Below, in pieces: positions 3,602 through 50,793 of a DNA stretch of 64,000 bases. The stretch lies in IMG/VR virus record IMGVR_UViG_3300042516_005475, positions 124,001 through 188,000 of that record. The stretch is one strand, 5' to 3'. Under the pieces are notes generated by a model. That model was not told where the DNA came from. It ran no database searches and worked only from the letters and a program-made list of their open reading frames with translations. The position numbers and the translations under genes are program-made. Position 1 is the stretch's first letter. Every line of letters starts with the position of its first letter.

Positions 3602-3916
3602 TTATCTTCTTTTTTTGGTCTTTATTTTTTTGTTTCCATCAATTTTTTCTAAAAACTTTTCACTTACAATTTCAACCAATTTTAAGCCTAAAAAACCAGC
3701 AATAAACGCTACACCATTTTGATGCTTAACATTTGTTACATTAAGAGTATCAACTAAAACTGGAGTTAAAAAATTAGCTGAAGATAATCCACCAACAAGA
3801 GATAAAACAATAGATTTTACATCAGAGTTGTTGTTTCTAGAAGCCATTAATATAGCTCCAAACAAACCACTAACTAAAAACCCAATCTCAATTCCTACTT
3901 TATGAAGAGTTTCCAT
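3602..3916 (-). CDS. Putative holin (3 TM segments, basic C-tail)
   Basis: Three hydrophobic segments, AFIAGFLGLKLVE motif, KKIKTKKRR tail. Confidence 0.55.
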   Translation of the reverse strand: METLHKVGIEIGFLVSGLFGAILMASRNNNSDVKSIVLSLVGGLSSANFLTPVLVDTLNVTNVKHQNGVAFIAGFLGLKLVEIVSEKFLEKIDGNKKIKTKKRR

Positions 3917-4534
3917 TTATTTCTTTTTCTTTTTAGTTGGTTTGGTTTTAATTGGCTTATCTTCATGCTTAATAATGTATATCAGAAAAACAATTACAAA
4001 ACATAATGAATAAAGATAAATGTTTAATAGTTTTGTTTCATCTTTAATTATCTTTTCAGAGCTATCATTAATTAAGGTTCTAAATTTATCTTTGCTGTCA
4101 TATATTCTCTTTTTATAATCTAGATATTTTTCACCAAAGAATGCCTTGCTATCCATCTTTTCAAAAGCTGGTCCTTCTACATCTTTTGCTAATTCACTGC
4201 TTATATCTAAACCAACTCTAAATTCTTTCAATTCGTCTTGAGTAAGTATTTTACTAATAAAGATTTCTTCGTTAAAATATTTCTCGCGTTCTTTTAAATG
4301 ATTATTAAATTGATCTAAGAATTTCTTATCACCTGTAGCCGTATATGCAGCACCAAGATAGGTTAAATGGTCTGTAGACTTTCTAAGATATAGAGTAATA
4401 TCTCTACCGAATCTAAACCTTGTGAATCCTTTTTCTATATCTTTTAGGCTAGATATAGAAAGCATTGTTATAATGGCTACAGGAAGAGTAACCACTAACA
4501 AATATTTTTTAATATTTGTGAATATGGCATTCAT
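3917..4534 (-). CDS. Membrane protein with two TM segments flanking a periplasmic helical domain
   Basis: N- and C-terminal hydrophobic helices, Lys-rich tail. Confidence 0.5.
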   Translation of the reverse strand: MNAIFTNIKKYLLVVTLPVAIITMLSISSLKDIEKGFTRFRFGRDITLYLRKSTDHLTYLGAAYTATGDKKFLDQFNNHLKEREKYFNEEIFISKILTQDELKEFRVGLDISSELAKDVEGPAFEKMDSKAFFGEKYLDYKKRIYDSKDKFRTLINDSSEKIIKDETKLLNIYLYSLCFVIVFLIYIIKHEDKPIKTKPTKKKKK

Positions 4535-18842: not shown

Positions 18843-19222
18843 GGGCCTGTACTGGTTTCGATTTAACAAACTAATATAGTGTTGCACGTAGATGTTGATC
18901 GGTTGGCATCTTAAAAAGCTGATCAAAAGTTAAACGCTGAATATAGCTATGACTACGAGGCTAAGGCTGACTCTTTTGAGTACGACTTCGCTTCTGAATC
19001 CGCTGTAGCCTAAGGGCTGCACCAGACCTACTCTAAACTTGTAAGGTAGAGTCTGCTATACAAGTATCTAGTTACTATGGTAGTAAGTAGCTGGATTATT
19101 GCTACCGAAAATCTGAGTTAGGTTGTTGCTTAGTAACCTCAGATTATACAAAGCAAATAAGCGTGTAGAAGCATTATAGTATTGGGTTAAAGACGCAGGT
19201 TCAACTCCTGCCAGGTCCACCA
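18843..19222 (+). ncRNA. ssrA: tmRNA
   Basis: 5' GGGCCTG pairs with 3' CAGGTCC-A-CCA including G3:U70; GGTTTCGA D-like loop; T arm GCAGG-TTCAACT-CCTGC; tag ORF 18936..19013 AEYSYDYEAKADSFEYDFASESAVA*. Confidence 0.93.
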
Positions 19223-19227
19223 ATTTC

Positions 19228-19315
19228 GGAAGGGTGGCAGAGTGGTTTAATGCAGCGGTCTTGAAAACCGCAGTGGGTAAAACCACCGGGGGTTCGAATC
19301 CCTCTCCTTCCTCCA
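19228..19315 (+). tRNA. tRNA-Ser(TGA)
   Basis: Cloverleaf with long variable arm, loop CTTGAAA, encoded CCA. Confidence 0.92.
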
Positions 19316-19316
19316 T

Positions 19317-19408
19317 GGAAAAGACGTGAATGTCGGTTTTTCACAGCAGTTTGCTAAACTGCCGAGGTGTAACAGCCTCCGTGAGTTCAACTCTCACCTT
19401 TTCCGCCA
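19317..19408 (+). tRNA. tRNA-Ser(GCT)
   Basis: GGAAAAG/CTTTTCC acceptor, loop TTGCTAA, long variable arm, CCA. Confidence 0.9.
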
Positions 19409-19415
19409 TTTCAAT

Positions 19416-19489
19416 TGGGGTATTGCATAATGGTAGTGCAGAGGTCTTTGAAGCCTCTTGCGGGAGTTCGATTCTCTCTACCCCAACCA
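19416..19489 (+). tRNA. tRNA-Gln(TTG)
   Basis: TGGGGTA/TACCCCA acceptor, loop CTTTGAA, CCA. Confidence 0.92.
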
Positions 19490-19495
19490 ATTTAT

Positions 19496-19570
19496 GGGCT
19501 GTTAGTGATAGTGGTAGCACGGGAGCTTTGCAAGCTTTAGGGAAGAGTTCGATTCTCTTACGGTCCACCA
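19496..19570 (+). tRNA. tRNA-Ala(TGC)
   Basis: G3:U70, loop TTTGCAA, CCA. Confidence 0.9.
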
Positions 19571-19583
19571 TAAATATTGTGAT

Positions 19584-19657
19584 GCGGGTATAGCTTAATG
19601 GTAAAGTGCCAGTCTTCCAAACTGGCTATGCGGGTTCGATTCCCGCTACCCGCTCCA
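19584..19657 (+). tRNA. tRNA-Gly(TCC)
   Basis: GCGGGTA/TACCCGC acceptor, loop CTTCCAA, U73, CCA. Confidence 0.93.
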
Positions 19658-30901: not shown

Positions 30902-30976
30902 GCTCCAATAGCTCAGCGGCAGAGCAAGCTGTTTATAACGGTTAGGCCGTAGGTTCGAATCCTACTTGGAGTACCA
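30902..30976 (+). tRNA. tRNA-Ile(TAT)
   Basis: Stem AGCTG/CGGTT, loop TT-TAT-AA, canonical T arm, A73, CCA. Confidence 0.85.
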
Positions 30977-30981
30977 TTAAT

Positions 30982-31067
30982 GCCACGGTGGTGAAATGGC
31001 AGACACAAGAGACTTAAAATCTCTAGCCGTAAAAAGCGTGCCGGTTCGAGTCCGGCCCGTGGTACCA
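30982..31067 (+). tRNA. tRNA-Leu(TAA)
   Basis: Loop CTTAAAA, long variable arm, CCA. Confidence 0.92.
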
Positions 31068-31133
31068 AATTTGAAAATAAAAGTTGCTTTCTAATAAAAA
31101 GCAGTTATTATTTAAACGTTCTTTAAATCTTAT

Positions 31134-31210
31134 GTCCTCGTAGCTCAGTTGGATAGAGCTTTCGCCTTCTAAGCGAAAAGTCACAGGTTCGACTCCTGTC
31201 GAGGACACCA
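31134..31210 (+). tRNA. tRNA-Arg(TCT)
   Basis: GTCCTCG/CGAGGAC acceptor, loop CTTCTAA, CCA. Confidence 0.92.
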
Positions 31211-31225
31211 TTTTTGTTCTTTAAC

Positions 31226-31301
31226 GGTCCATTCGTCTAATGGTTTAGGACAGCAGGTTTTCAACCTGTTAATAGGAGTTCGATTCTCCTATGGACTACC
31301 A
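31226..31301 (+). tRNA. tRNA-Glu(TTC)
   Basis: GGTCCAT/ATGGACT acceptor, loop TTTTCAA, CCA. Confidence 0.9.
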
Positions 31302-31309
31302 AATTTAAC

Positions 31310-31382
31310 TGCGGGATGGAGCAGTGGCAGCTCGTCTGGCTCATAACCACGAAGGTCGAGGGTTCGAGTCCCTCTCCCGCTA
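31310..31382 (+). tRNA. tRNA-fMet(CAT), initiator-like, lacking encoded CCA
   Basis: U1:U72 mismatch, GGAGCAG..GCTCGT initiator-like D arm, loop CTCATAA; irregular anticodon stem; followed by GAG instead of CCA. Confidence 0.82.
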
Positions 31383-32116
31383 GAGTGAGCGCAAACTACT
31401 TGCACGTAGTTCACTTGCACACCTTATTGGTGACCAAATGTTTGCAACCTAGAGTTTATTATATCAATAATAATATTGAGGTAAGTGTAACTTGATTGTT
31501 CTTTGAAATATTTTTGCTGTGTTGTATCTATAATACACAAATCAATTTTATTCGCTATACACTGATAAAATTTATTGTTATCATTTTTTTGTATTTGATT
31601 CAATATTTTGTCACCGTAAATTGATTCATAATGAAAAATACCATTCAATTCAAATGCTAATCCTAATTTAGGTAAATATATATCTAATTCAGAATATATA
31701 GCTTCTTTACTATTAAACAAAATAGTTAACTCAGGGTATTTTTCTTTTAACTTATTTTCAATCCATATCTCAAGCTTAGATCTTCTCGTGCCATGTTTTT
31801 TGTGAGTATTGTTATACCTAGCAGAGCAGTTTTTACTACAAAAAGTATTTTTTCTGGATTTGTATGGTAAAGAAATACCACACTGTTTACATTTTCGTGG
31901 TTGAGATTCATAAAATGTGTGTATTTCTGCTGTTTTTGTACTATGATACTTACCTCTACCGTTTGTGTGGTTAACAGTATTATTGTAAGAATACCAACAA
32001 CTACGTTTATGACTATTTAAAGCTAACAAATTTTTAAGTTCTTTTTTGCACTTCGAGCAGGAGACCATATAATATTATTTATGAAAAATGGATTTCAAAT
32101 CCCTCTCCCGCTACCA
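31369..32116 (-). mobile_element. Free-standing endonuclease cassette bounded by a 14-bp direct repeat of the tRNA-fMet 3' end
   Basis: TCCCTCTCCCGCTA at 31369..31382 and at 32100..32113; the second copy is preceded by TTCAAA and followed by CCA. Confidence 0.75.
31424..32068 (-). CDS. Zinc-finger plus Vsr-like PD-(D/E)XK homing endonuclease
   Basis: CSKC..HxxxC, CKQC..FCSKNC; SKLE...ELDIYLPKLGLAFELNGIFHY. Confidence 0.8.
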   Translation of the reverse strand: MVSCSKCKKELKNLLALNSHKRSCWYSYNNTVNHTNGRGKYHSTKTAEIHTFYESQPRKCKQCGISLPYKSRKNTFCSKNCSARYNNTHKKHGTRRSKLEIWIENKLKEKYPELTILFNSKEAIYSELDIYLPKLGLAFELNGIFHYESIYGDKILNQIQKNDNNKFYQCIANKIDLCIIDTTQQKYFKEQSSYTYLNIIIDIINSRLQTFGHQ

Positions 32117-32209
32117 ATGTGAGTTTGTCAGTGAGTACTCATTAAAAACTGAATGGTGGAGGTGGCTAGAAATAGCCTCTAGAGTTAAGATTCTCTTTAA
32201 AAAATCTAT

Positions 32210-32286
32210 GGCTCTTTGGTGAAATTGGATTATCATAAGACCCTACGAAGGTCCTGTTCTAGGTTCAAATCCTAGAGGAGCCACCA
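32210..32286 (+). tRNA. tRNA-Arg(ACG)
   Basis: Loop CTACGAA, T arm CTAGG-TTCAAAT-CCTAG, CCA. Confidence 0.9.
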
Positions 32287-32343
32287 ATTTAAAACCGTAA
32301 GTAACATAAATACTTACAGTTCATTGACAATTTTAAGAATTTC

Positions 32344-32429
32344 GGGGTATTATACCGCTAAAGAGACGGTCCAGACTGTAAATCTGGCGCTTAACAGCTC
32401 GGTAGGAGCATTACCTACATACCCCACCA
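32344..32429 (+). tRNA. tRNA-Tyr(GTA) with non-canonical T loop
   Basis: GGGGTAT/ATACCCC acceptor, CCAGA-CTGTAAA-TCTGG, long variable arm, T loop AGCATTA, CCA. Confidence 0.82.
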
Positions 32430-32431
32430 CT

Positions 32432-32507
32432 CCACTGATAGCTCAGATGGTAGAGCGTCTCCCTGAAGAGGTGAAGGTCGCAAGCTCGAAACTTGCTCAG
32501 TGGACCA
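32432..32507 (+). tRNA. tRNA-Phe(GAA)
   Basis: CCACTGA/TCAGTGG acceptor, loop CTGAAGA, T loop CTCGAAA, CCA. Confidence 0.82.
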
Positions 32508-32515
32508 TTTTTTGC

Positions 32516-32592
32516 GGGGTTGTAGCTTAATTGGTTAAAGCATCAGTCTGTCACATTGAAGAGTGCGGGTTCGAGTCCCGTCAATCCCGCCA
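32516..32592 (+). tRNA. tRNA-Asp(GTC)
   Basis: Loop CTGTCAC, G73, CCA. Confidence 0.9.
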
Positions 32593-32728
32593 TAACTTTA
32601 AAGTAGGTATCAACGTGCTGTGTTGGTATTAAAAAGCTAACCTACTTTTTTGAGGTTCACACAGTATTACATAGCCGCGATCGAGGCCATAATGATGTAT
32701 TAACTGATTGGCTCAGACGACCTCATAT

Positions 32729-32806
32729 ATCCGGGAATGTTCCAAGGCTAGGCGACAGAGTCTCCAAAACTCAGTGAGGTAAGTTCGATTCTTACCCCGG
32801 ATGCCA
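32729..32806 (+). tRNA. tRNA-Trp(CCA)
   Basis: ATCCGGG/CCCGGAT acceptor, loop CTCCAAA, G73, CCA. Confidence 0.85.
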
Positions 32807-32811
32807 TTTTC

Positions 32812-32886
32812 GGTACAGTAGCACAGTGGTAGTGCAGAGTCTTGATAAGGCTAAGGTCGCAGGTTCAATCCCTGCCTGTACCACCA
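32812..32886 (+). tRNA. tRNA-Ile(GAT)
   Basis: GGTACAG/CTGTACC acceptor, loop TTGATAA, CCA. Confidence 0.9.
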
Positions 32887-32920
32887 AATTTTTAACATAC
32901 AGATGAAGGCGACAAGCTAG

Positions 32921-32992
32921 TATATGTAGAGCGGTTCTCCACCCTAACATTTACCCGGGCGGGTGATCTCGGTTCGACTCCAAGAACATATA
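32921..32992 (+). ncRNA. tRNA-like cloverleaf with 16-nt anticodon loop, no CCA
   Basis: TATATGT/ACATATA acceptor, GAG/CTC mini D arm, CACCC/GGGTG stem, T arm CTCGG-TTCGACT-CCAAG. Confidence 0.5.
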
Positions 32993-33109
32993 TTATGCAA
33001 CGAAGTAGTAACTGTATGGGACACTGATAGACGACTGTATTTAAAGTGTAACCGGAACAATTAGAATACAGTTGGAACGTTTCGTGAAGTCCAGTAAACA
33101 CTTTTCAAC

Positions 33110-33185
33110 TCCAGAGTAGCTCAATGGTAGTAGCGACGCGCTGTTAACGCGTAGGTTGTAGGTTCGAGTCCTACCTCTGGAGCCA
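33110..33185 (+). tRNA. tRNA-Asn(GTT)
   Basis: TCCAGAG/CTCTGGA acceptor, loop CTGTTAA, G73, CCA. Confidence 0.92.
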
Positions 33186-33315
33186 ATTTTTTGTTTAGTG
33201 TCAGCAGGCTCATGATGCTGAAGAAAGACGCAAATAGCGCAACTTGCGGTCGTGGAGAATGAGTAGGTCTTAACACCTTGTATGGTACCTTTAAACCAAC
33301 ATTAAACATATTTTC

Positions 33316-33399
33316 GGGCTTGTGATGAAATGGCAGACATAGCGGTCTTAGAAGCCGTTGCTGAAAAGCGTGGAGGTTCAAGTCCTCTCGAGCCCACCA
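33316..33399 (+). tRNA. tRNA-Leu(TAG)
   Basis: Loop CTTAGAA, long variable arm, CCA. Confidence 0.92.
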
Positions 33400-33407
33400 A
33401 ATTCAAC

Positions 33408-33484
33408 GGTGCATGTAGCTCAATTGGTAGAGCCTTGGCTTGTGGAGCCAATTGTTACGGGTTCGAGCCCCGTCATGCACACCA
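33408..33484 (+). tRNA. tRNA-His(GTG)
   Basis: Encoded G-1, GTGCATG/CATGCAC acceptor, loop TTGTGGA, A73, CCA. Confidence 0.9.
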
Positions 33485-33488
33485 TTTC

Positions 33489-33565
33489 GCGCCAAGACGG
33501 AGCTGGGTAACTGAGCAGTCTGCAAAACTGTTAAATGGTGGGTTCGATTCCCACTTGGCGCTCCA
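33489..33565 (+). tRNA. tRNA-Cys(GCA)
   Basis: GCGCCAA/TTGGCGC acceptor, loop CTGCAAA, U73, CCA. Confidence 0.9.
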
Positions 33566-33605: not shown

Positions 33606-34352
33606 ATGAAGCTTAGCTCAGCTAACAAGAAAATTGTTGTGTTCTCTGATGTACACAATGAAATTAACAAAACAAAAAAGATCATAGAAAAGGAGAGTGC
33701 AGATTATAACATTTGCCTAGGGGATTGGTTTGATAGTTTTTATTTAGATAACACCTATCATTACAAGCTTGCTGCAGAGTATCTTGTAAATGAGTTTTTA
33801 CCTAAACAGAACAATATTTCTCTTTTCGGTAATCACGACCTTCATTATTTCTTTAAAAATCAATACACCATGTGTAGCGGTTTTGAGCGTCGCAAACATG
33901 AAGCAATTAGTGAGATTATAAATTATTCTTTTGTAGATAAGTTCAAATGGTACATTTGGATTGATAACTACCTATGTACTCACGCTGGTCTGCACCCTAA
34001 TTTCATTGATCCTACATGTAAGAATAATGAAGATATTGATATCTTTCTACAAAAAGAGTCTGAGCGAGCTGATTCAGCTCTTATTGATCAACAGGAGCAT
34101 TGGTTTTACGGTGCTGGTTTTTCTCGTGGTGGTAAATATCGCCAAGGGGGCATTGTTTGGTTAGACTTCAACGATGAGTTTGAATGTGTTGAAAACCTTA
34201 ATCAGATTGTTGGTCACACTAATCAGCGCAATAATAATTGTTCAATTTTAATTAAAGACAATTCCGATAATATCTGTATTGATTGCCATCAGAACCAATA
34301 CCTAGTTATTCAAAACGAAAAAATTAATATTAAAAATTACATTGATTTGTGA
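33606..34352 (+). CDS. Calcineurin-like metallophosphoesterase
   Basis: FSDVHN, CLGDWFD, FGNHD, THAG, QIVGHT. Confidence 0.9.
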   Translation: MKLSSANKKIVVFSDVHNEINKTKKIIEKESADYNICLGDWFDSFYLDNTYHYKLAAEYLVNEFLPKQNNISLFGNHDLHYFFKNQYTMCSGFERRKHEAISEIINYSFVDKFKWYIWIDNYLCTHAGLHPNFIDPTCKNNEDIDIFLQKESERADSALIDQQEHWFYGAGFSRGGKYRQGGIVWLDFNDEFECVENLNQIVGHTNQRNNNCSILIKDNSDNICIDCHQNQYLVIQNEKINIKNYIDL

Positions 34353-37501: not shown

Positions 37502-37576
37502 GCCGGGTTAGCTCAGCGGTAGAGCAGCTGATTTGTAATCAGCAGGTCGTCGGTTCAAGCCCGACACCCGGCTCCA
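37502..37576 (+). tRNA. tRNA-Thr(TGT)
   Basis: GCCGGGT/ACCCGGC acceptor, loop TTTGTAA, CCA. Confidence 0.93.
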
Positions 37577-40841: not shown

Positions 40842-40917
40842 GGGTCATTAACTCAAAGGTTAGAGTAAGGGCCTCATAAGCCCCTAGTTGTAGGTTCGAA
40901 TCCTACATGGCCCACCA
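40842..40917 (+). tRNA. tRNA with CAT anticodon (elongator Met or Ile2)
   Basis: GGGTCAT/ATGGCCC acceptor, loop CTCATAA, A73, CCA; Met versus Ile2 not resolvable by eye. Confidence 0.88.
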
Positions 40918-46065: not shown

Positions 46066-46458
46066 ATGAGCTATTATCTCTTTTTGGACGATGAACGCTT
46101 CCCTCAAGATGTCACTTGGGTGAAGCTCCCACCCCACAACTGGACCATTGTTCGCAACTATGCTGACTTTGTGCGAACCATTGAGAACAAAGGTTTGCCT
46201 GTGGAAATTGCCTTTGATCATGACTTGGGACACGAGCATTATCAGGCCTATCATGCCGCTGCTAAGCCTGGACATGGAGTCATTGATTACAGCAGCTTCA
46301 AGGAGAAGACTGGTCTCGACTGCGCCAAGTGGCTCATTGAACATTGTAACGAGAAGAATTTGCCGTTCCCCAAGTATTATGTTCACTCCATGAACCCCAT
46401 TGGCAAGCAGAATATCATCAACGCTGTCAATTCCTTCAAAAGATATTTGCAAAAGTAG
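46066..46458 (+). CDS. Cyclic-phosphate-processing receiver (cREC) domain protein
   Basis: LFLDDERFP, VRNY, IAFDHDLG, TGLDCAKWL, VHSMNPIG; TTGATT-16-TATAAT promoter at 46032..46059. Confidence 0.8.
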   Translation: MSYYLFLDDERFPQDVTWVKLPPHNWTIVRNYADFVRTIENKGLPVEIAFDHDLGHEHYQAYHAAAKPGHGVIDYSSFKEKTGLDCAKWLIEHCNEKNLPFPKYYVHSMNPIGKQNIINAVNSFKRYLQK

Positions 46459-46601
46459 TGGCGTTCCTTCAAAAAAGCAGCCATAATGATTGTAGAAAAT
46501 TTAGAACGGTAGTAACGTTCAACAGGTGCTGACAATACGTAGAAAAAGATAGTGTTGGCTAAGTGCGAGTTGTAGTGCCTCCAGCCTGTGTTCTTTTCAA
46601 T

Positions 46602-46920
46602 GCGATCGTAGCTCAACGGTAGAGCATCGGCCTTTAATAGGAGCGCTTATAGAGTGATCTATAAGATGAACCGAGCCATATGCGGGGACCTCCTTAGAGC
46701 CTTGAGTACCGTAAGGTAAAAATCTCAAGGATTGGACAATCCGCAGGAAACCAGTAGATTAGTACGCTGTTGGTCATAAATTGGGATCCTCAGAGACTTT
46801 ACGCTTGGCATCTCTAAAAGAGATGATGATAAAGTCCAGACTACAACGGAAACGGCTAGTGAAAACTAGAGTAGTAAGTTAAGCCGGGTGTTGTGGATTC
46901 GAATTCCACCGGTCGCACCA
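46602..46920 (+). tRNA. tRNA-Lys(TTT) interrupted by a group I intron (exons 46602..46634 and 46879..46920)
   Basis: Acceptor GCGATCG/CGGTCGC, A73, CCA; anticodon stem TCGGC/GCCGG; spliced loop CTT|TTAA; 75-nt mature tRNA. Confidence 0.88.
46635..46878 (+). ncRNA. Group I self-splicing intron, 244 nt, no internal ORF
   Basis: P1 CUU/GAG with U.G; P2 hairpin; P3 CCGAGC/GCTTGG; P TGCGGGGA; Q AATCCGCAGG; R TCAGAGACT; P7 GACTTT/AAAGTC; P8 CATCTCT/AGAGATG; P9; terminal G at 46878. Confidence 0.92.
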
Positions 46921-47020
46921 TATTTGCCAACAGGGCTCAGCTTGATGCTTTGGACAGATAACAAAGTCTGATAGAGAGGCTAGTGCAGAAAATCCTGTAT
47001 AAACTGCACATTAATTTTTC

Positions 47021-47098
47021 GGCAAGAGTCCTGATCAGACATGGTAAAGTGCCTGCAGAGGGCACGAGGCAGGTTCAAGTCCTCCATCTTGCCGTTCA
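47021..47098 (+). ncRNA. Degenerate tRNA-like element
   Basis: GGCAAGA/TCTTGCC acceptor, GTGCC-TGCAGAG-GGCAC arm, GGTTCAAGTCC T loop, no CCA. Confidence 0.5.
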
Positions 47099-47216
47099 AT
47101 TTAGTTCTTTTACATTTGAGTTGGAGCTGTATCCGCAAGGACAGCATGGTGTTAGTGAAAGCATTGGAAATGCAGTCTTTCACCGGACTACGACGGTTCC
47201 ATCCAACTCTTTAAAT

Positions 47217-47361
47217 TTATCTGTAGCTCAGCGGTAAGAGCAGAGTTCCTAACTATGGGTAAAGCCCTTAAAAATCTTATGTTAGGTCGTAAAATTGCCT
47301 TGTACTGATATTTTACAAGTTGTAAAAGTAGCCGTTGGTTCGATTCCAACCAGATGAACAA
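47217..47361 (+). ncRNA. tRNA-like RNA with a ~90-nt structured insert replacing the anticodon arm
   Basis: TTATCTG/CAGATGA acceptor, GCTC-AGCGGTAA-GAGC D arm, GTTGG-TTCGATT-CCAAC T arm, ends ACAA. Confidence 0.6.
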
Positions 47362-47454
47362 TTACGCCCGGAGAATACCCGATAAATAGGACACTTAATT
47401 TGGTTCCCCATCAGAGGATTAAAACGCCAATTAAAAGACCGGCGACAATTTTAT

Positions 47455-47586
47455 GCCAGGAGAGCGCGAGTAATACGCCTTCAGCTAGATGTAGTAATTA
47501 GCGTCTAGCAACGAGAAGAACAAAGGAAACCGAAGTAATTACCGGCTAACCTTTTATAGGTGGATAAAGAACCACCCCTGACACCA
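47455..47586 (+). ncRNA. CCA-terminated structured RNA of unknown class
   Basis: GCCAGG/CCTGAC-A-CCA closing stem, GGTGG/CCACC terminal arm, three internal elements carrying AGTAAT. Confidence 0.45.
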
Positions 47587-47590
47587 ATTT

Positions 47591-47725
47591 AACAAGACAG
47601 ATAGACGTGTAAGTAAGCTTTGGAAGCCACCCATAAGTGGGTGACTGGGTTCGATTCCCAGGAGCTTATTAGGGAACAAACTGCCATCTCGACGAGAGAG
47701 CGTAGGTGAAATCCTGAAACTTGTT
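47591..47725 (+). ncRNA. Structured RNA containing a D-armless tRNA-like domain (47614..47668)
   Basis: AACAAG/CTTGTT closing stem; TAAGCTT/GAGCTTA; CACCCA-TAAG-TGGGTG; CTGGG-TTCGATT-CCCAG. Confidence 0.5.
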
Positions 47726-47736
47726 TCAAATTTTAT

Positions 47737-47765
47737 TTGCAGTTCCTGTTACTTTCAGTTAAACT
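47737..47765 (+). promoter_or_regulatory. TTCCTG-box sigma70-like promoter
   Basis: TTGCAG-TTCCTG..17..TAAACT. Confidence 0.75.
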
Positions 47766-47786
47766 AAACGTAGTAAAAATAAAAAA

Positions 47787-48333: not shown

Positions 48334-49731
48334 ATGCCTGTTAACAGTAATGTAACAACTCCTAATTACCAAACTTTAGAGTATCAAAAGTTTGTCCAAA
48401 TATATAATGATACTAGATTCCCTCCAATAACAAGTGTAAGATCTGACTATTATAGCGGTACACAGATTGAGATATATGATAAGTATGCTGTATTAACTTT
48501 TGATATTGGGCAAAATGCAGCTCTAGGACCAGCTAATACGTTGCCGTTTGGAGATAATGCTGCTAGTGATGCCTTTGGTAGACTGAGAGTTTCTCTCCCA
48601 TCTACCTTATTTAACTCTAAACAAAATAATGATAGTAATTCTTTACTCTATAGCACAGCAACTGTAAATACAGGTAGTTGGTATTTTGATAACAATAATG
48701 CCTGTACAGTCTTATCTGTTTCAGCAACAGGAGATGTTGCTATAAAGCAGTCAAAAAAGTATATGAATTATCAGCCTGGCAAATCCCAGCTGATATTCGA
48801 AACCTTTGTAATGCCTAACACAGCAGGCATAGTTAACAGAGTTGGTTTATTTGATAGCTCAACAACTTCTCCATATAGCAATAATATTGAGGGTTATTAT
48901 TTTCAATGTAATAATGGAGTAAATTCTTTCCATATTGCTAATGTTGGTGACGAGCCAAGCCAAAGCGCTTTACAATCTGAATGGAACATAGACAAGCTTA
49001 ACGGTACAGGTTTATCTGGTATAACATTAGATGTTACAAAAACCCAGATTTTAGTAATAGATTACGAGTGGTTAGGGGTAGGGAGAGTTAGAATGGGGTT
49101 CTGTATTAATGGTATTATATTTTATTGTCATCAATTCGTTCATGCAAATGAAGTCTCTCTTCCTTATCTCCAAGATCCAAACAAACCTATTAGATATGAA
49201 ATTAGAAGCACAGGTGGAATAGGTTCATTAAAACAAATATGCGCTAGTGTTATGAGTGAAGGTGGAAGTGTTGATAACGCTATCCCGTTATCTATTGATA
49301 CTGGGTTTGACAGTATTGGTAATATTTCAAGCAATACATTATGGCCAGCTATAACTGTTAGACTAAAAGATTCTTTTAAGAGTGTAGATATACAATTAAA
49401 AGACTTTGCTGCAATGGCTTTCTCAACTACTAATACTCTTGTAAGAGTAGTATCAAATGGTGTTATTTCTAATTCAGCAGCCTTTGTTGATATGAGCTCT
49501 GGGGCCTTGGAATATAGTATAGGCACTACTTCTACTACTCTTACTGGAGGTGTTATATTATTCAGCTCTTTTTTTAATAAGGCCAGCAATACTATTAGTC
49601 AATTAGGAGAGTCTTTATATAGTTTAGGTAGCAACATAAACGGCACCAAAGATACATTATCATTAGTATTAGTTCCATGTGGAGGAAATGAAAAGTATTT
49701 TGCTGCAATGAACTTCAAACAGTACCTATAA
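48334..49731 (+). CDS. Probable virion structural beta-rich protein
   Basis: SDAFGRLRVS, YQPGKSQL, DYEWLGVGRVRMG; Ser/Thr/Asn-rich; ATAAATA 12 nt upstream. Confidence 0.6.
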   Translation: MPVNSNVTTPNYQTLEYQKFVQIYNDTRFPPITSVRSDYYSGTQIEIYDKYAVLTFDIGQNAALGPANTLPFGDNAASDAFGRLRVSLPSTLFNSKQNNDSNSLLYSTATVNTGSWYFDNNNACTVLSVSATGDVAIKQSKKYMNYQPGKSQLIFETFVMPNTAGIVNRVGLFDSSTTSPYSNNIEGYYFQCNNGVNSFHIANVGDEPSQSALQSEWNIDKLNGTGLSGITLDVTKTQILVIDYEWLGVGRVRMGFCINGIIFYCHQFVHANEVSLPYLQDPNKPIRYEIRSTGGIGSLKQICASVMSEGGSVDNAIPLSIDTGFDSIGNISSNTLWPAITVRLKDSFKSVDIQLKDFAAMAFSTTNTLVRVVSNGVISNSAAFVDMSSGALEYSIGTTSTTLTGGVILFSSFFNKASNTISQLGESLYSLGSNINGTKDTLSLVLVPCGGNEKYFAAMNFKQYL

Positions 49732-49776: not shown

Positions 49777-50793
49777 ATGGAACGTAAACTTGCTAGTGTT
49801 CGTAAGATTCAAGAAATTAAGCTCATCGAAGGTGCTGACAAGATTTGCGCCTACCGAGTTGATGGTTGGTGGGTTGTAGATAGTATTAATAAGTATAATG
49901 TTGGTGATCTTGTGGTCTACTACGAGATTGATAGCTTTCTACCAATCACTCCTCAATTTGAGTTTCTCCGCAAGTCTTCATTCAAGAAGATGGGTGAACG
50001 TGAAGGCTTTAGGCTCAAGACTATTAAGCTCAAGGGCCAGCTCAGCCAAGGTCTCTTGACTAAAATTCCAATTGGTCTCATTGTACCTCCTAAGGAAAAT
50101 GATGACATGACTGAGTTGCTCGGCATTATCAAGTATGAGCCTCCTATTCCTGCTGAGCTAGCTGGTGAGATCAAGGGTTCGTTCCCTAGCTTCATCCCTA
50201 AGACTGATGAGGTTCGTATTCAGAACTTTGAAAGGGAAGTTGGGGTTTCTATCGCTAATGAGCGAGTTTACGCTACTGAGAAGGTTGATGGTACTAGCTT
50301 TACTTGTTATGTTAACAATGGTGAGTTTGGTGTTTGTGGTCGCAATTGGGAGTTGAAGGAGACTCAAGGTAACTCTCTTTGGCGAATGGCTAACAAGCTC
50401 AATCTTCGTGAGAAGCTCTTGAGTCTCAATCTTAACATTGCCTTGCAGGGTGAGTTGTTTGGTAGTGGAATTAATGGTAATTGGTACAAGCTCAATGATC
50501 ACCGACTCATGTTCTTTACTGGATATGATATTGATAATCAAAAGCGATTGCAGTTTAATGAGTTAATGAACTTGTTGGATAGTTTGCAGTTGGAAAGTGT
50601 TCCTGTTATTGATTATATTGCTACTATTCCAGATGGTACTATGGCTGAGATCGTTGAGTGGTCTTTGTTGTATGCTGAGTCTGAGAGTAATATTAATGCT
50701 GCTGTAGAGAACGAAGGTGTTGTTATTCGTGGTCTTGAGAAGGAGTTTAGCTTCAAGGCTATTAGTAACAAGTGGCTCCTTAGTGAAAAGTAA
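49777..50793 (+). CDS. RNA ligase (Rnl2-like, DRB0094-type with N-terminal tRNA-binding/OB domain)
   Basis: RKLASVRKI..IEGAD, YYEIDS, LKGQLSQG, PKTDEVRIQN, TEKVDGTS, QGELFG, EGVVIR, FKAISNKWLL. Confidence 0.9.
   Translation: MERKLASVRKIQEIKLIEGADKICAYRVDGWWVVDSINKYNVGDLVVYYEIDSFLPITPQFEFLRKSSFKKMGEREGFRLKTIKLKGQLSQGLLTKIPIGLIVPPKENDDMTELLGIIKYEPPIPAELAGEIKGSFPSFIPKTDEVRIQNFEREVGVSIANERVYATEKVDGTSFTCYVNNGEFGVCGRNWELKETQGNSLWRMANKLNLREKLLSLNLNIALQGELFGSGINGNWYKLNDHRLMFFTGYDIDNQKRLQFNELMNLLDSLQLESVPVIDYIATIPDGTMAEIVEWSLLYAESESNINAAVENEGVVIRGLEKEFSFKAISNKWLLSEK

What the first reader, a model, noticed from the sequence alone, without database searches (positions are those of the whole stretch)
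46602..46920. Phage tRNA-Lys(UUU) split in its anticodon by a self-splicing group I intron
Seen: two tRNA halves (46602-46634, 46879-46920) separated by 244 nt that carry the whole group I core. This includes P1 CUU/GAG with the U.G pair at the splice site, P3 CCGAGC/GCTTGG, P/Q TGCGGGGA/AATCCGCAGG, R/S forming P7 GACTTT/AAAGTC, P8, P9 and a terminal G. Joining at these sites gives a 75-nt tRNA with loop CUU|UUAA and A73, and it supplies the Lys isotype otherwise missing from this window's tRNAs. Known: bacterial tRNA group I introns occur in Leu(UAA) at the same 34/35 position with the same 3-bp CUU/GAG P1, and in fMet, Ile(CAU) and Arg(CCU); plastid trnK carries a group II intron. I do not recall a group I intron in tRNA-Lys, or in a phage tRNA. 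Inference: tRNA-Lys(UUU) is the classic target of the anticodon nuclease PrrC, so the unspliced precursor may be a nuclease-proof reservoir. Automated tRNA callers would probably miss or mis-call it.
Basis: partly seen in the sequence, partly recalled or inferred. Interest (0 to 1): 0.92.

Follow-up and report, generated by a model that had tools for sequence, protein, structure and literature searches.

The report
Self-splicing intron splits phage tRNA-Lys
A large phage carries a lysine tRNA gene split in its anticodon by a 244-base self-splicing group I intron, which has lost the DNA-cutting gene that spreads its relatives; such introns had been reported only in phage protein genes, and standard tRNA finders miss it.

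Summary
Rfam's group I model hits 46624-46859 (70.9 bits, E about 1e-16). The joined exons give a canonical 75-nt tRNA-Lys(UUU).

The intron is not a one-off. Homologous introns sit at the same site of tRNA-Lys(UUU) genes in at least six other IMG/VR contigs and about 15 metagenome contigs. Most are about 665 nt long and carry a PD-(D/E)XK endonuclease ORF (PF11645; best solved relative 2OST) in the P6 region. Related phages hold ORF-bearing, ORF-less (this window) and intron-less alleles.

Of 74 intron base pairs, 24 show compensatory changes, and P1 (CUU/GAG with U.G) is invariant.

Best reading: a mobile group I intron of the bacterial tRNA-intron type, here without its homing endonuclease, that probably still self-splices.

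I found no published description of real group I introns in phage tRNA genes or in tRNA-Lys(UUU), so I rate it a new member of a known kind.

The parts
46602..46634 (+). tRNA-Lys(UUU) exon 1: acceptor 5' strand, D arm, anticodon-stem 5' strand, and loop nt C32 U33 U34
   Evidence: ARAGORN -i. Identical over nt 8-34 to the intron-less gene in L041. Matches the intron-less L021 allele up to L021:2400.
46635..46878 (+). ORF-less group I intron, 244 nt, ending in G46878 (omega-G)
   Evidence: Rfam RF00028 at 70.9 bits. All helices are complementary. 24 of 74 pairs covary across 6 homologues.
46879..46920 (+). tRNA-Lys(UUU) exon 2: U35 U36 A37 A38, anticodon-stem 3' strand, variable loop, T arm, acceptor 3' strand, A73, CCA
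   Evidence: ARAGORN on the spliced sequence. Matches L021 from position 2400 onward.
46638..46643 (+). Internal guide sequence UAG|GAG. GAG pairs with exon CUU 46632-46634 (P1, U34.G46641). UAG pairs with exon UUA 46879-46881 (P10).
   Evidence: P1 is invariant in 6 homologues. P10 is UAG (window) or UAA (homologues), which pairs either way.
46646..46665 (+). P2, 8 bp with a GUGA tetraloop
   Evidence: 5 of 8 pairs show compensatory changes.
46671..46676 (+). P3 5' strand (pairs with 46803-46808)
   Evidence: 3 of 6 pairs are compensatory.
46681..46745 (+). P4 (46681-86 / 46740-45), P5 (46691-93 / 46734-36), P5a (46700-06 / 46724-30), P5b (46707-18, GUAA loop), A-rich bulge 46719-46723
   Evidence: About 82% identical to introns of Acinetobacter and Pseudomonas phages.
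46746..46789 (+). P6 (46746-47 / 46788-89) with the P6a hairpin 46750-46774. In relatives, the body of the endonuclease ORF (about 420 nt) lies between 46774 and 46781.
   Evidence: Alignment. P6a is the least conserved helix.
46795..46836 (+). P7 5' strand 46795-800, P3 3' strand 46803-08, P8 hairpin 46809-25, J8/7 46826-30, P7 3' strand 46831-36 (catalytic core; P3/P7 pseudoknot)
   Evidence: P7 is invariant in all homologues. In relatives the core also encodes the C-terminal 25 aa of the endonuclease; tblastn gives 81% identity at 46786-46863.
46840..46875 (+). P9 domain: P9 46840-44 / 46871-75, P9a 46847-54 (GAAA loop), P9b 46856-69 (GAAA loop)
   Evidence: All 5 pairs of P9b are compensatory.

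Best explanation
The window holds a real phage tRNA-Lys(UUU) gene interrupted between wobble U34 and U35 by a compact, ORF-less group I intron.

Proposed mechanism:
1. The gene is transcribed as a 319-nt precursor.
2. The intron's guide sequence (UAG-GAG) pairs with the last three exon-1 bases (CUU, P1, with U.G at the splice site) and the first three exon-2 bases (UUA, P10).
3. An exogenous guanosine cleaves after U34.
4. The freed U34 3'-OH attacks after the terminal G46878.
5. This yields a 75-nt tRNA-Lys(UUU) and a free intron.

The intron belongs to a mobile family that targets the anticodon stem-loop of tRNA-Lys(UUU) genes of large aquatic phages. Relatives carry an I-Ssp6803I-type PD-(D/E)XK homing endonuclease in the P6 region. 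The window copy has lost that ORF. It therefore persists as a passenger that must splice for the phage to have this tRNA.

Shown: the intron and tRNA anatomy, homology, covariation, the endonuclease family, and the allele distribution. Inferred: splicing activity, homing, and the direction of ORF loss.
For: **Intron and tRNA in the window**
- Rfam group I hit at 70.9 bits, E about 1e-16.
- ARAGORN finds the tRNA-Lys(ttt) precursor and the canonical spliced tRNA.
- All of P1-P10 are complementary.

**Homologous introns at the same site**
- Viral contigs: L194, L196, L179, L191, L185 (two copies) and L190/L181.
- Metagenome: 17 of 18 hits are tRNA 3' halves preceded by G|UUAA.
- All seven in-silico spliced genes are called tRNA-Lys(ttt).

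**Covariation**
- 432 of 451 pair cells are paired.
- 24 of 74 pairs show compensatory double changes.
- P1, P4 and P7 are invariant.

**Endonuclease in relatives**
- The ORF matches PF11645 PDDEXK_5 at E 1e-18 to 1e-21.
- The best solved relative is 2OST, E 7e-5.
- The ORF is inserted after P6a and reads through the core.

**Allele distribution**
- Phages sharing 4-7 proteins with the window (ThyX 79-83% identity) carry ORF-bearing (L194, L196, L179) or intron-less (L041, L016) alleles.
- The empty site is seen in L021, where the two exon halves abut at position 2400.

**ORF decay and loss**
- L185b/L181 have a broken ORF.
- A second ORF-less copy (L307) has a different deletion junction.
- The window keeps 81% identity to the last 25 codons of the ORF.

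**Demand for the tRNA**
- It is the only Lys tRNA in the window, and Lys is 9.3% of codons, with AAA more frequent than AAG.
Against: - No experiment or transcript data show splicing.
- P1 is only 3 bp. That is normal for tRNA introns at this site, but splicing probably depends on the anticodon stem.
- P6a is poorly conserved, and the deletion that removed the ORF could have impaired folding.
- Calling the state 'ORF lost' rather than 'never had an ORF' rests on two different deletion junctions and the retained ORF tail, not on a rooted tree.
- The other 166 kb of the contig were not examined and might hold another tRNA-Lys.
- The host is unknown.
Confidence: 0.82

Rival explanations
1. Counter-defence device. 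The unspliced precursor hides U33-U34 inside P1 and so serves as a store of tRNA-Lys that anticodon nucleases such as PrrC cannot cut. Splicing then releases fresh tRNA during infection.
For: - PrrC cleaves tRNA-Lys(UUU) just 5' of the wobble base (established knowledge). The intron sits one nucleotide away, and the loop is not formed in the precursor.
- The phage encodes RNA-repair-type proteins nearby: cREC_REC 46066-46458, RNA ligase 49777-50793, and a metallophosphoesterase 33606-34352.
- Other tRNAs carry introns in related giant phages (Leu, Tyr).
Against: - The mature product has the standard CUUUUAA loop, so it is as exposed as any tRNA-Lys once spliced.
- Close relatives do well without the intron (L041, L021 and others). 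They carry the same repair genes.
- The endonuclease ORF, its decay and its repeated loss fit selfish spread, not selection for a shield.
- Nothing suggests slow or regulated splicing.
Confidence: 0.07
2. Dead element. The intron no longer splices, so the tRNA-Lys gene is a pseudogene left after invasion and loss of the endonuclease.
For: - The ORF deletion removed about 420 nt from P6, and P6a pairs are the least conserved.
- Neighbouring tRNA-like elements look degenerate (47217-47359 and 47021-47094).
Against: - Every core helix, the U.G pair, the guide sequence, the terminal G and three GNRA loops are intact.
- Differences from homologues are compensatory.
- The exons are undamaged and identical over 57 nt to an uninterrupted gene (L041).
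- No other Lys tRNA is in the window, although Lys codons are abundant.
Confidence: 0.09
3. Assembly chimera or contaminating bacterial fragment, rather than a phage gene.
For: The contig is a metagenome assembly with no close relative among GenBank phages.
Against: - The same gene-in-pieces arrangement occurs in more than 20 independent contigs from different samples.
- The flanks are phage-like: a virion protein about 35% identical to T4-like cyanophage proteins, tRNA arrays and ThyX.
- The sequence downstream of exon 2 is 92-94% identical to the intron-less relative L021.
Confidence: 0.01

Closest known systems
[quoted passage not shown]
   Same: - Inserted between nt 34 and 35 of the anticodon loop.
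- The 5' exon ends in CUU and pairs with GAG in a 3-bp P1.
- Small, ORF-less and self-splicing; the exon anticodon stem persists in the precursor.
- Viral and Clostridia tRNA-Leu(UAA) introns fetched here share the P7-P3'-P8-P7' core motif with the window intron.
   Different: - The host gene is tRNA-Lys(UUU), so the 3' exon starts UUAA rather than AAAA, with a matching P10.
- Overall identity to the Leu introns is only 53-62%.
- It resides in a phage genome.
- Relatives carry an endonuclease ORF, which the Leu introns seen here lack.
Synechocystis tRNA-fMet group I intron encoding I-Ssp6803I
   Same: - A group I intron in a tRNA anticodon loop.
- Its homing endonuclease is of the PD-(D/E)XK fold (PF11645). 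Relatives of the window intron encode that family, and 2OST is their best solved match. That 2OST is I-Ssp6803I is from my memory.
- The anticodon stem-loop DNA is a natural pseudo-palindromic target.
   Different: - Different tRNA (Lys, not fMet) and a different genome type. PMC3384342 states that close homologues of I-Ssp6803I are generally cyanobacterial.
- Protein identity is low (E 7e-5).
- The window copy has no ORF at all.
Azoarcus tRNA-Ile(CAU) and Agrobacterium tRNA-Arg(CCU) introns
   Same: Compact bacterial tRNA group I introns, about 200-250 nt, ORF-less, with GNRA loops on P2 and P9 and no P7.1/P7.2.
   Different: - Their insertion sites and tRNAs differ (from memory).
- The window intron has a longer P5 extension with an A-rich bulge.
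- Membership of the same subgroup was not established here.
Phage group I introns in protein-coding genes (T4 td/nrdB/nrdD, Twort, SPO1, Bastille)
   Same: - Phage-borne, self-splicing, and spread by homing endonucleases, with patchy distribution among related phages.
- The P4-P6 domain of the window intron is about 82% identical to introns near the terminase or portal genes of Acinetobacter and Pseudomonas phages.
   Different: - Those interrupt ORFs; this one interrupts a tRNA.
- None of 116 other IMG/VR loci sharing the P4-P6 motif was in a tRNA gene.
- There is no P7.1/P7.2, which typifies the IA introns of T-even phages.
PrrC anticodon nuclease versus T4 Pnkp/Rnl1 repair of tRNA-Lys
   Same: It concerns the same tRNA species, and the phage carries RNA ligase and end-processing genes.
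   Different: Nothing here links the intron to that conflict. The repair genes are shared with intron-less relatives.

Membership tests
Group I intron (Rfam RF00028) | Covariance-model score above the curated threshold | tested here: met
   70.9 bits against a gathering score of 50; E 5.6e-16.
Group I intron (Rfam RF00028) | P1 formed by the 5' exon end and an internal guide, with U.G at the 5' splice site | tested here: met
   C46632-G46643, U46633-A46642, U46634.G46641. Invariant in 6 homologues.
Group I intron (Rfam RF00028) | Terminal guanosine (omega-G) at the 3' splice site, and P10 with the 3' exon | tested here: met
   G46878. P10 is 46638-40 / 46879-81. All homologues end in G before UUAA.
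Group I intron (Rfam RF00028) | Conserved core: P3-P8 and P4-P6 domains with the P3/P7 pseudoknot | tested here: met
   All helices are complementary. 24 of 74 pairs are compensatory and 96% of cells are paired.
Group I intron (Rfam RF00028) | Guanosine-dependent self-splicing | not testable with these tools
   Needs in vitro transcription with GTP and Mg2+, or transcript data.
Bacterial-type tRNA-Lys(UUU) | Cloverleaf with a 7-nt anticodon loop (U33, anticodon UUU, A37) after exon joining | tested here: met
   ARAGORN calls a 75-nt tRNA-Lys(ttt). Identical over nt 8-66 to the uninterrupted gene in L041.
Bacterial-type tRNA-Lys(UUU) | Charging by LysRS and use in translation | not testable with these tools
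   U35, U36 and A73 are present in the sequence. There is no functional data.
Mobile group I intron with homing endonuclease | Endonuclease ORF inside the intron | tested here: not met
   The window intron has no ORF, and no free-standing copy lies in the window; only the last 25 codons survive in the core. Relatives L194, L196 and L185a carry a 163-164-aa PF11645 ORF.
Mobile group I intron with homing endonuclease | Intron-plus and intron-less alleles of the same gene in related genomes | tested here: met
   Intron-less: L041, L021, L016 and others. Intron-plus: L194, L196, L179. All share proteins with the window.
Subgroup IC3 (bacterial tRNA introns) | P2 present; no P7.1/P7.2; no full P5abc; sequence affinity to tRNA-Leu/Ile/Arg introns | tested here: inconclusive
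   - The junction J7/3 is 2 nt, so there is no P7.1/P7.2, and P2 is present.
- There is a P5a/P5b extension with an A-rich bulge.
- Identity to tRNA-Leu introns is only 53-62%.
- No subgroup-specific model was available.
Anti-anticodon-nuclease (PrrC) counter-defence | Confers protection of tRNA-Lys function under nuclease attack | not testable with these tools
   Only circumstantial context is available. The repair genes are shared with intron-less relatives.

The most novel reading that the evidence does not exclude
Intron-split tRNA genes are a selected feature of large aquatic phages rather than mere parasites.
- Several tRNAs (Lys, Leu, Tyr) carry introns in the same giant genomes.
- The introns or their endonucleases may serve phage-phage competition by cutting the tRNA genes of co-infecting rivals.
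- Or they may gate or shield the supply of nuclease-targeted tRNAs during infection.
- In that case the ORF-less window copy would be retained for its RNA-level role.
Probability: 0.1. Interest if true: 0.8.

Novelty: new member of a known kind. Interest (0 to 1): 0.55.

Why it matters
- **It overturns a reviewed generalisation.** A 2014 review (PMC3984707) noted that phage group I introns are always in protein-coding genes, despite phages having many tRNA genes. Phage tRNA genes are in fact invaded, and in some giant phages repeatedly.
- **It adds a new target and a new habitat.** It adds tRNA-Lys(UUU) to the short list of intron-bearing bacterial-type tRNAs. It also extends the I-Ssp6803I-type endonuclease family from cyanobacteria to phages.
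- **It exposes an annotation gap.**
  - Default tRNA callers miss these genes.
  - With introns allowed, ARAGORN found the window gene but mis-called several homologues as Arg, Asn or Stop.
  - Phage tRNA repertoires and apparent suppressor tRNAs may therefore be mis-counted.
- **It offers a natural series for study.** ORF-bearing, broken-ORF, two independently ORF-less, and empty-site alleles together illustrate the homing cycle. The 244-nt ribozyme is small, with rich comparative data.

Tried and rejected
- **GenBank phages.** The 20-kb surroundings gave only a tRNA-Thr match. The locus itself matched only in P4-P6.
- **Close relatives through neighbouring proteins in IMG/VR.** This returned only the source contig or distant hits.
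- **P4-P6 motif scan.** It gave 116 other loci, none in a tRNA, with similarity confined to P4-P6. The domain is shared with protein-gene introns and did not lead to relatives.
- **Exon-gap-exon scan of metagenomes.** It found nothing, because relatives have a different anticodon stem and a longer intron.
- **L034 and L036.** These hold a tRNA-Lys 5' half followed by unrelated sequence and have no group I hit. I did not pursue them.
- **Short inserts in giant-virus tRNA-Lys genes.** These 10-40-nt inserts lie after nt 37. I judged them to be ordinary eukaryote-type tRNA introns and irrelevant here.
- **Rfam's P1 register.** I rejected it in favour of the register that gives a terminal G and a 7-nt loop.
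- **Subgroup assignment.** I attempted it by structure and by identity to tRNA-Leu introns, but left it open.
- **The odd tRNA at 47217-47359.** Two ARAGORN models conflict, and no homologue of the insert was found. It remains unexplained.
- **Literature.** Seven searches found no report of a real group I intron in a phage tRNA gene. The library lacks most subscription journals.

Full report
**1. The observation**

The sequence at 46602-46920 reads as the first-stage reader described.
- Rfam's group I model matches 46624-46859 on the + strand at 70.9 bits. The curated threshold is 50. E is 5.6e-16 for the whole window and 1.2e-17 locally.
- ARAGORN in default mode lists 21 tRNAs and a tmRNA but not this gene. 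The Rfam tRNA model misses it too.
- With introns allowed, ARAGORN calls tRNA-Lys(ttt) at exactly 46602-46920 with a 244-nt intron after nt 34.
- Joining 46602-46634 to 46879-46920 gives a canonical 75-nt tRNA-Lys(UUU) with loop CUUUUAA, A73 and an encoded CCA.

A script confirmed the complementarity of every helix:
- P1: CUU 46632-34 with GAG 46641-43, with U34.G at the splice site.
- P10: UAG 46638-40 with exon UUA 46879-81.
- P2: 8 bp with a GUGA loop.
- P3: 46671-76 / 46803-08.
- P4: 46681-86 / 46740-45.
- P5, P5a and P5b, with a GUAA loop and a 5-nt A-rich bulge.
- P6 and P6a.
- P7: 46795-800 / 46831-36.
- P8: 46809-25.
- A three-helix P9 domain with two GAAA loops.
- The terminal G at 46878.

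Only 2 nt separate P7 from the P3 3' strand, so the P7.1/P7.2 helices typical of T-even phage introns are absent. The intron holds no ORF.

**2. The splice junction**

Rfam's alignment places P1 one base out of register. The run of T's allows two placements that give the same product, but only the 34|35 placement leaves a terminal G on the intron. Three further lines fix that junction:
- Homologues whose intron begins with A have no such ambiguity (L194-type, CCUU|AGGUAA).
- Uninterrupted genes exist. L041 is identical to the spliced product over 57 nt, from nt 8 to 66.
- In L021 the two exon halves of the window abut at position 2400. The sequence downstream of exon 2 is 92-94% identical to L021.

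**3. A family, not a singleton**

The window is part of IMGVR_UViG_3300042516_005475, a 230-kb contig.

A scan of IMG/VR with a P7-to-P7' pattern gave 26 other loci. In six other contigs the pattern lies in a tRNA-Lys(UUU) gene, at the same site as in the window:
- L194, L196, L179, L191.
- L185, with two such genes.
- The 388-kb contig of L190/L181, also with two.

A stricter pattern found 18 stretches in the metagenome collection. In 17 of them a G|UUAA junction is followed by a tRNA 3' half. One hit is a Global Ocean Sampling record, AACY020179381.

All seven genes that I spliced in silico are called tRNA-Lys(ttt) by default ARAGORN.

Identity of the window precursor (ORF removed) to these copies is 69-80%. 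It is 53-62% to tRNA-Leu(UAA) introns and 60% to a tRNA-Lys intron in a Gemmatales MAG.

**4. Structure is under selection**

I aligned the window with six homologues.
- 432 of 451 intron pair cells are standard pairs.
- 24 of 74 pairs carry compensatory double changes. For example, all five pairs of P9b covary, five of eight in P2, three of six in P3 and five of seven in P5a.
- P1, P4 and P7 never vary.
- P10 is UAG in the window and UAA elsewhere; both pair with UUA.
- The tRNA stems covary as well.
- The only poorly supported helix is P6a, next to the ORF insertion point.

**5. The endonuclease**

Most relatives are 663-669 nt long because a 163-164-codon ORF lies after the P6a hairpin. It reads on through P6', P7, P3', P8, P7' and P9 to a stop in P9b.
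- The protein matches Pfam PF11645 (PD-(D/E)XK endonuclease) at E 1e-18 to 1e-21.
- Its best solved relative is 2OST at E 7e-5. From memory, 2OST is I-Ssp6803I, the homing endonuclease of the Synechocystis tRNA-fMet intron. PMC3384342 says close homologues of that enzyme are generally cyanobacterial.
- The window lacks the body of the ORF but keeps 81% identity to its last 25 codons, which double as the ribozyme core. No free-standing copy lies in the window.

Three observations point to decay and repeated loss of the ORF, the usual course of a homing cycle:
- One copy in L185/L181 has a broken ORF.
- A second ORF-less copy (L307, 243 nt) has a different deletion junction. It lacks the P6a hairpin that the window keeps, and it keeps 3' ORF remnants that the window lacks.
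- The window retains the ORF tail.

This polarity is inferred, not proven by a rooted tree.

**6. Distribution among related phages**

L194, L196, L179, L041 and L016 share 4-7 proteins with the window within 7-14 kb. ThyX is 79-83% identical and the cREC_REC protein 41-55%. This loose clade holds ORF-bearing introns (L194, L196, L179), an ORF-less intron (the window) and empty sites (L041, L016, L021).

The virion protein 48334-49731 is about 35% identical to proteins of T4-like cyanophages. The host is unknown.

No cultured phage in GenBank carries the intron or a close homologue of the endonuclease.

**7. Wider context**

Other tRNA genes in viral contigs carry group I introns:
- tRNA-Leu(UAA) in L173 (197 nt, 67.9 bits) and in L185/L190 (218 nt, 58.4 bits).
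- tRNA-Tyr(GUA) in L190 has a 650-nt insert with an HNH-motif ORF. I did not verify that this insert is a group I intron.

In the genome collection the same core pattern occurs 94 times.
- ARAGORN places 18 of these in tRNAs: Leu(UAA) in Clostridia MAGs, and also Arg, Gly, Glu and others. I did not verify these calls.
- One is a tRNA-Lys(UUU) in a GC-rich Gemmatales MAG, with a 248-nt intron at 34/35. Rfam scores it 47 bits, just under threshold.

**8.

The PrrC link is a reasonable association. The intron lies one nucleotide from the PrrC cleavage site, and the phage has RNA-repair-type genes: cREC_REC at 46066-46458, RNA ligase at 49777-50793 and a metallophosphoesterase at 33606-34352.

Four points count against it:
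- Those genes are also present in the intron-less relative L041.
- The spliced tRNA has an ordinary loop.
- Relatives thrive without the intron.
- The endonuclease biology explains the distribution without any benefit to the phage.

I give the shield idea about 7%.

What selection probably does require is that the intron keeps splicing. This is the only Lys tRNA in the window, and Lys is 9.3% of codons, with 479 AAA against 356 AAG.

**9. Novelty**

- The 2014 review PMC3984707 states that all phage introns observed to date are in protein-coding genes, despite many phage-encoded tRNA genes.
- Seven searches found no later report of a group I intron in a phage tRNA gene.
[quoted passage not shown] Those inserts are 22-49 nt and cannot be group I ribozymes (PMC5733544).
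- The searchable library omits most subscription journals, so prior description cannot be excluded.

Mechanistically this is the known kind: a tRNA-anticodon group I intron with a PD-(D/E)XK homing endonuclease. What is new is the tRNA and the type of genome. I therefore rate it a new member of a known kind, of moderate interest.

Noticed in passing
window 47217-47359 (+): A second odd tRNA. The acceptor, D and T arms are good (Rfam tRNA 36.4 bits), but the anticodon arm is replaced by about 86 nt. ARAGORN gives two conflicting intron models: CUA with a 56-nt intron, and UUU with a 62-nt intron. It sits where relatives have tRNA-Met(CAU) and is followed by the same downstream motif. No homologue of the insert was found, and no ribozyme family matches.
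   Followed up: partly
window 47021-47094 (+); L194 10251-10319; L297 2407-2475: A conserved tRNA-like RNA. It has a 7-bp terminal stem, a GGTTCAAGTCC T-loop and a hairpin with loop UGCAGAG. It is 84-86% identical in two related phages, with compensatory changes in the terminal stem. Neither ARAGORN nor Rfam calls it.
   Followed up: partly
window 47614-47670 (+): A tRNA-like minihelix: an acceptor-like stem, one hairpin and a canonical T arm, with no D arm. It has a weak mascRNA-like Rfam hit (20.5 bits). The whole 1.3-kb stretch 46459-47786 has no credible ORF and is densely structured.
   Followed up: no
window 18843-19222 and the tRNA clusters at 19228-19657, 30902-33565, 37502-37576 and 40842-40917: A phage-encoded tmRNA (113 bits; tag peptide ending SESAVA) plus 21 canonical tRNAs. 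Pro, Val and Tyr are absent from the window.
   Followed up: no
window 46066-46458, 49777-50793, 33606-34352: RNA-repair-type genes: a cREC_REC cyclic-phosphate-processing receiver domain protein, an RNA ligase (PF09414 plus PF21189), and a calcineurin-like phosphoesterase. Homologues of the cREC_REC and phosphoesterase genes are present in the intron-less relative L041.
   Followed up: partly
L190 c[12660,13392]; L185 c[2048,2350]; L173 5025-5295: Other intron-bearing tRNA genes in viral contigs. tRNA-Tyr(GUA) has a 650-nt insert holding an HNH-motif ORF, and I did not verify that this insert is a group I intron. tRNA-Leu(UAA) genes have 218-nt and 197-nt group I introns (Rfam 58.4 and 67.9 bits). 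One 388-kb phage contig holds at least four split tRNA genes.
   Followed up: partly
L280 (Gemmatales MAG JBBRPS010000704.1), Rfam hit 3864-4095 (-): A GC-rich bacterial tRNA-Lys(UUU) gene with a 248-nt group I intron at the same 34/35 site. Rfam scores it 47 bits, and it is about 60% identical to the phage family. ARAGORN -i mis-calls it as tRNA-Asn.
   Followed up: partly
L194 8273-8764; L196 4866-5357 (-); L185 2482-2976 (-): In relatives the endonuclease ORF runs through the catalytic core (P6' to P9b). The same bases therefore serve as ribozyme helices and as the last 25 or so codons.
   Followed up: yes
L007, L017, L018, L026, L028-L030, L033, L035, L037, L039, L042, L047-L049: One tRNA-Lys(UUU) gene family, seen in viral contigs of which only some are labelled as giant-virus bins, carries 10-40-nt inserts after nt 37. 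I judged these to be eukaryote-type tRNA introns.
   Followed up: no
L185 c[1887,2043]; L181 c[5432,5588]; L300: A 155-157-nt tRNA-like gene with a 73-83-nt insert lies beside the intron-bearing tRNAs of another phage lineage. It resembles window element 47217-47359 in kind but is not related to it in sequence.
   Followed up: no
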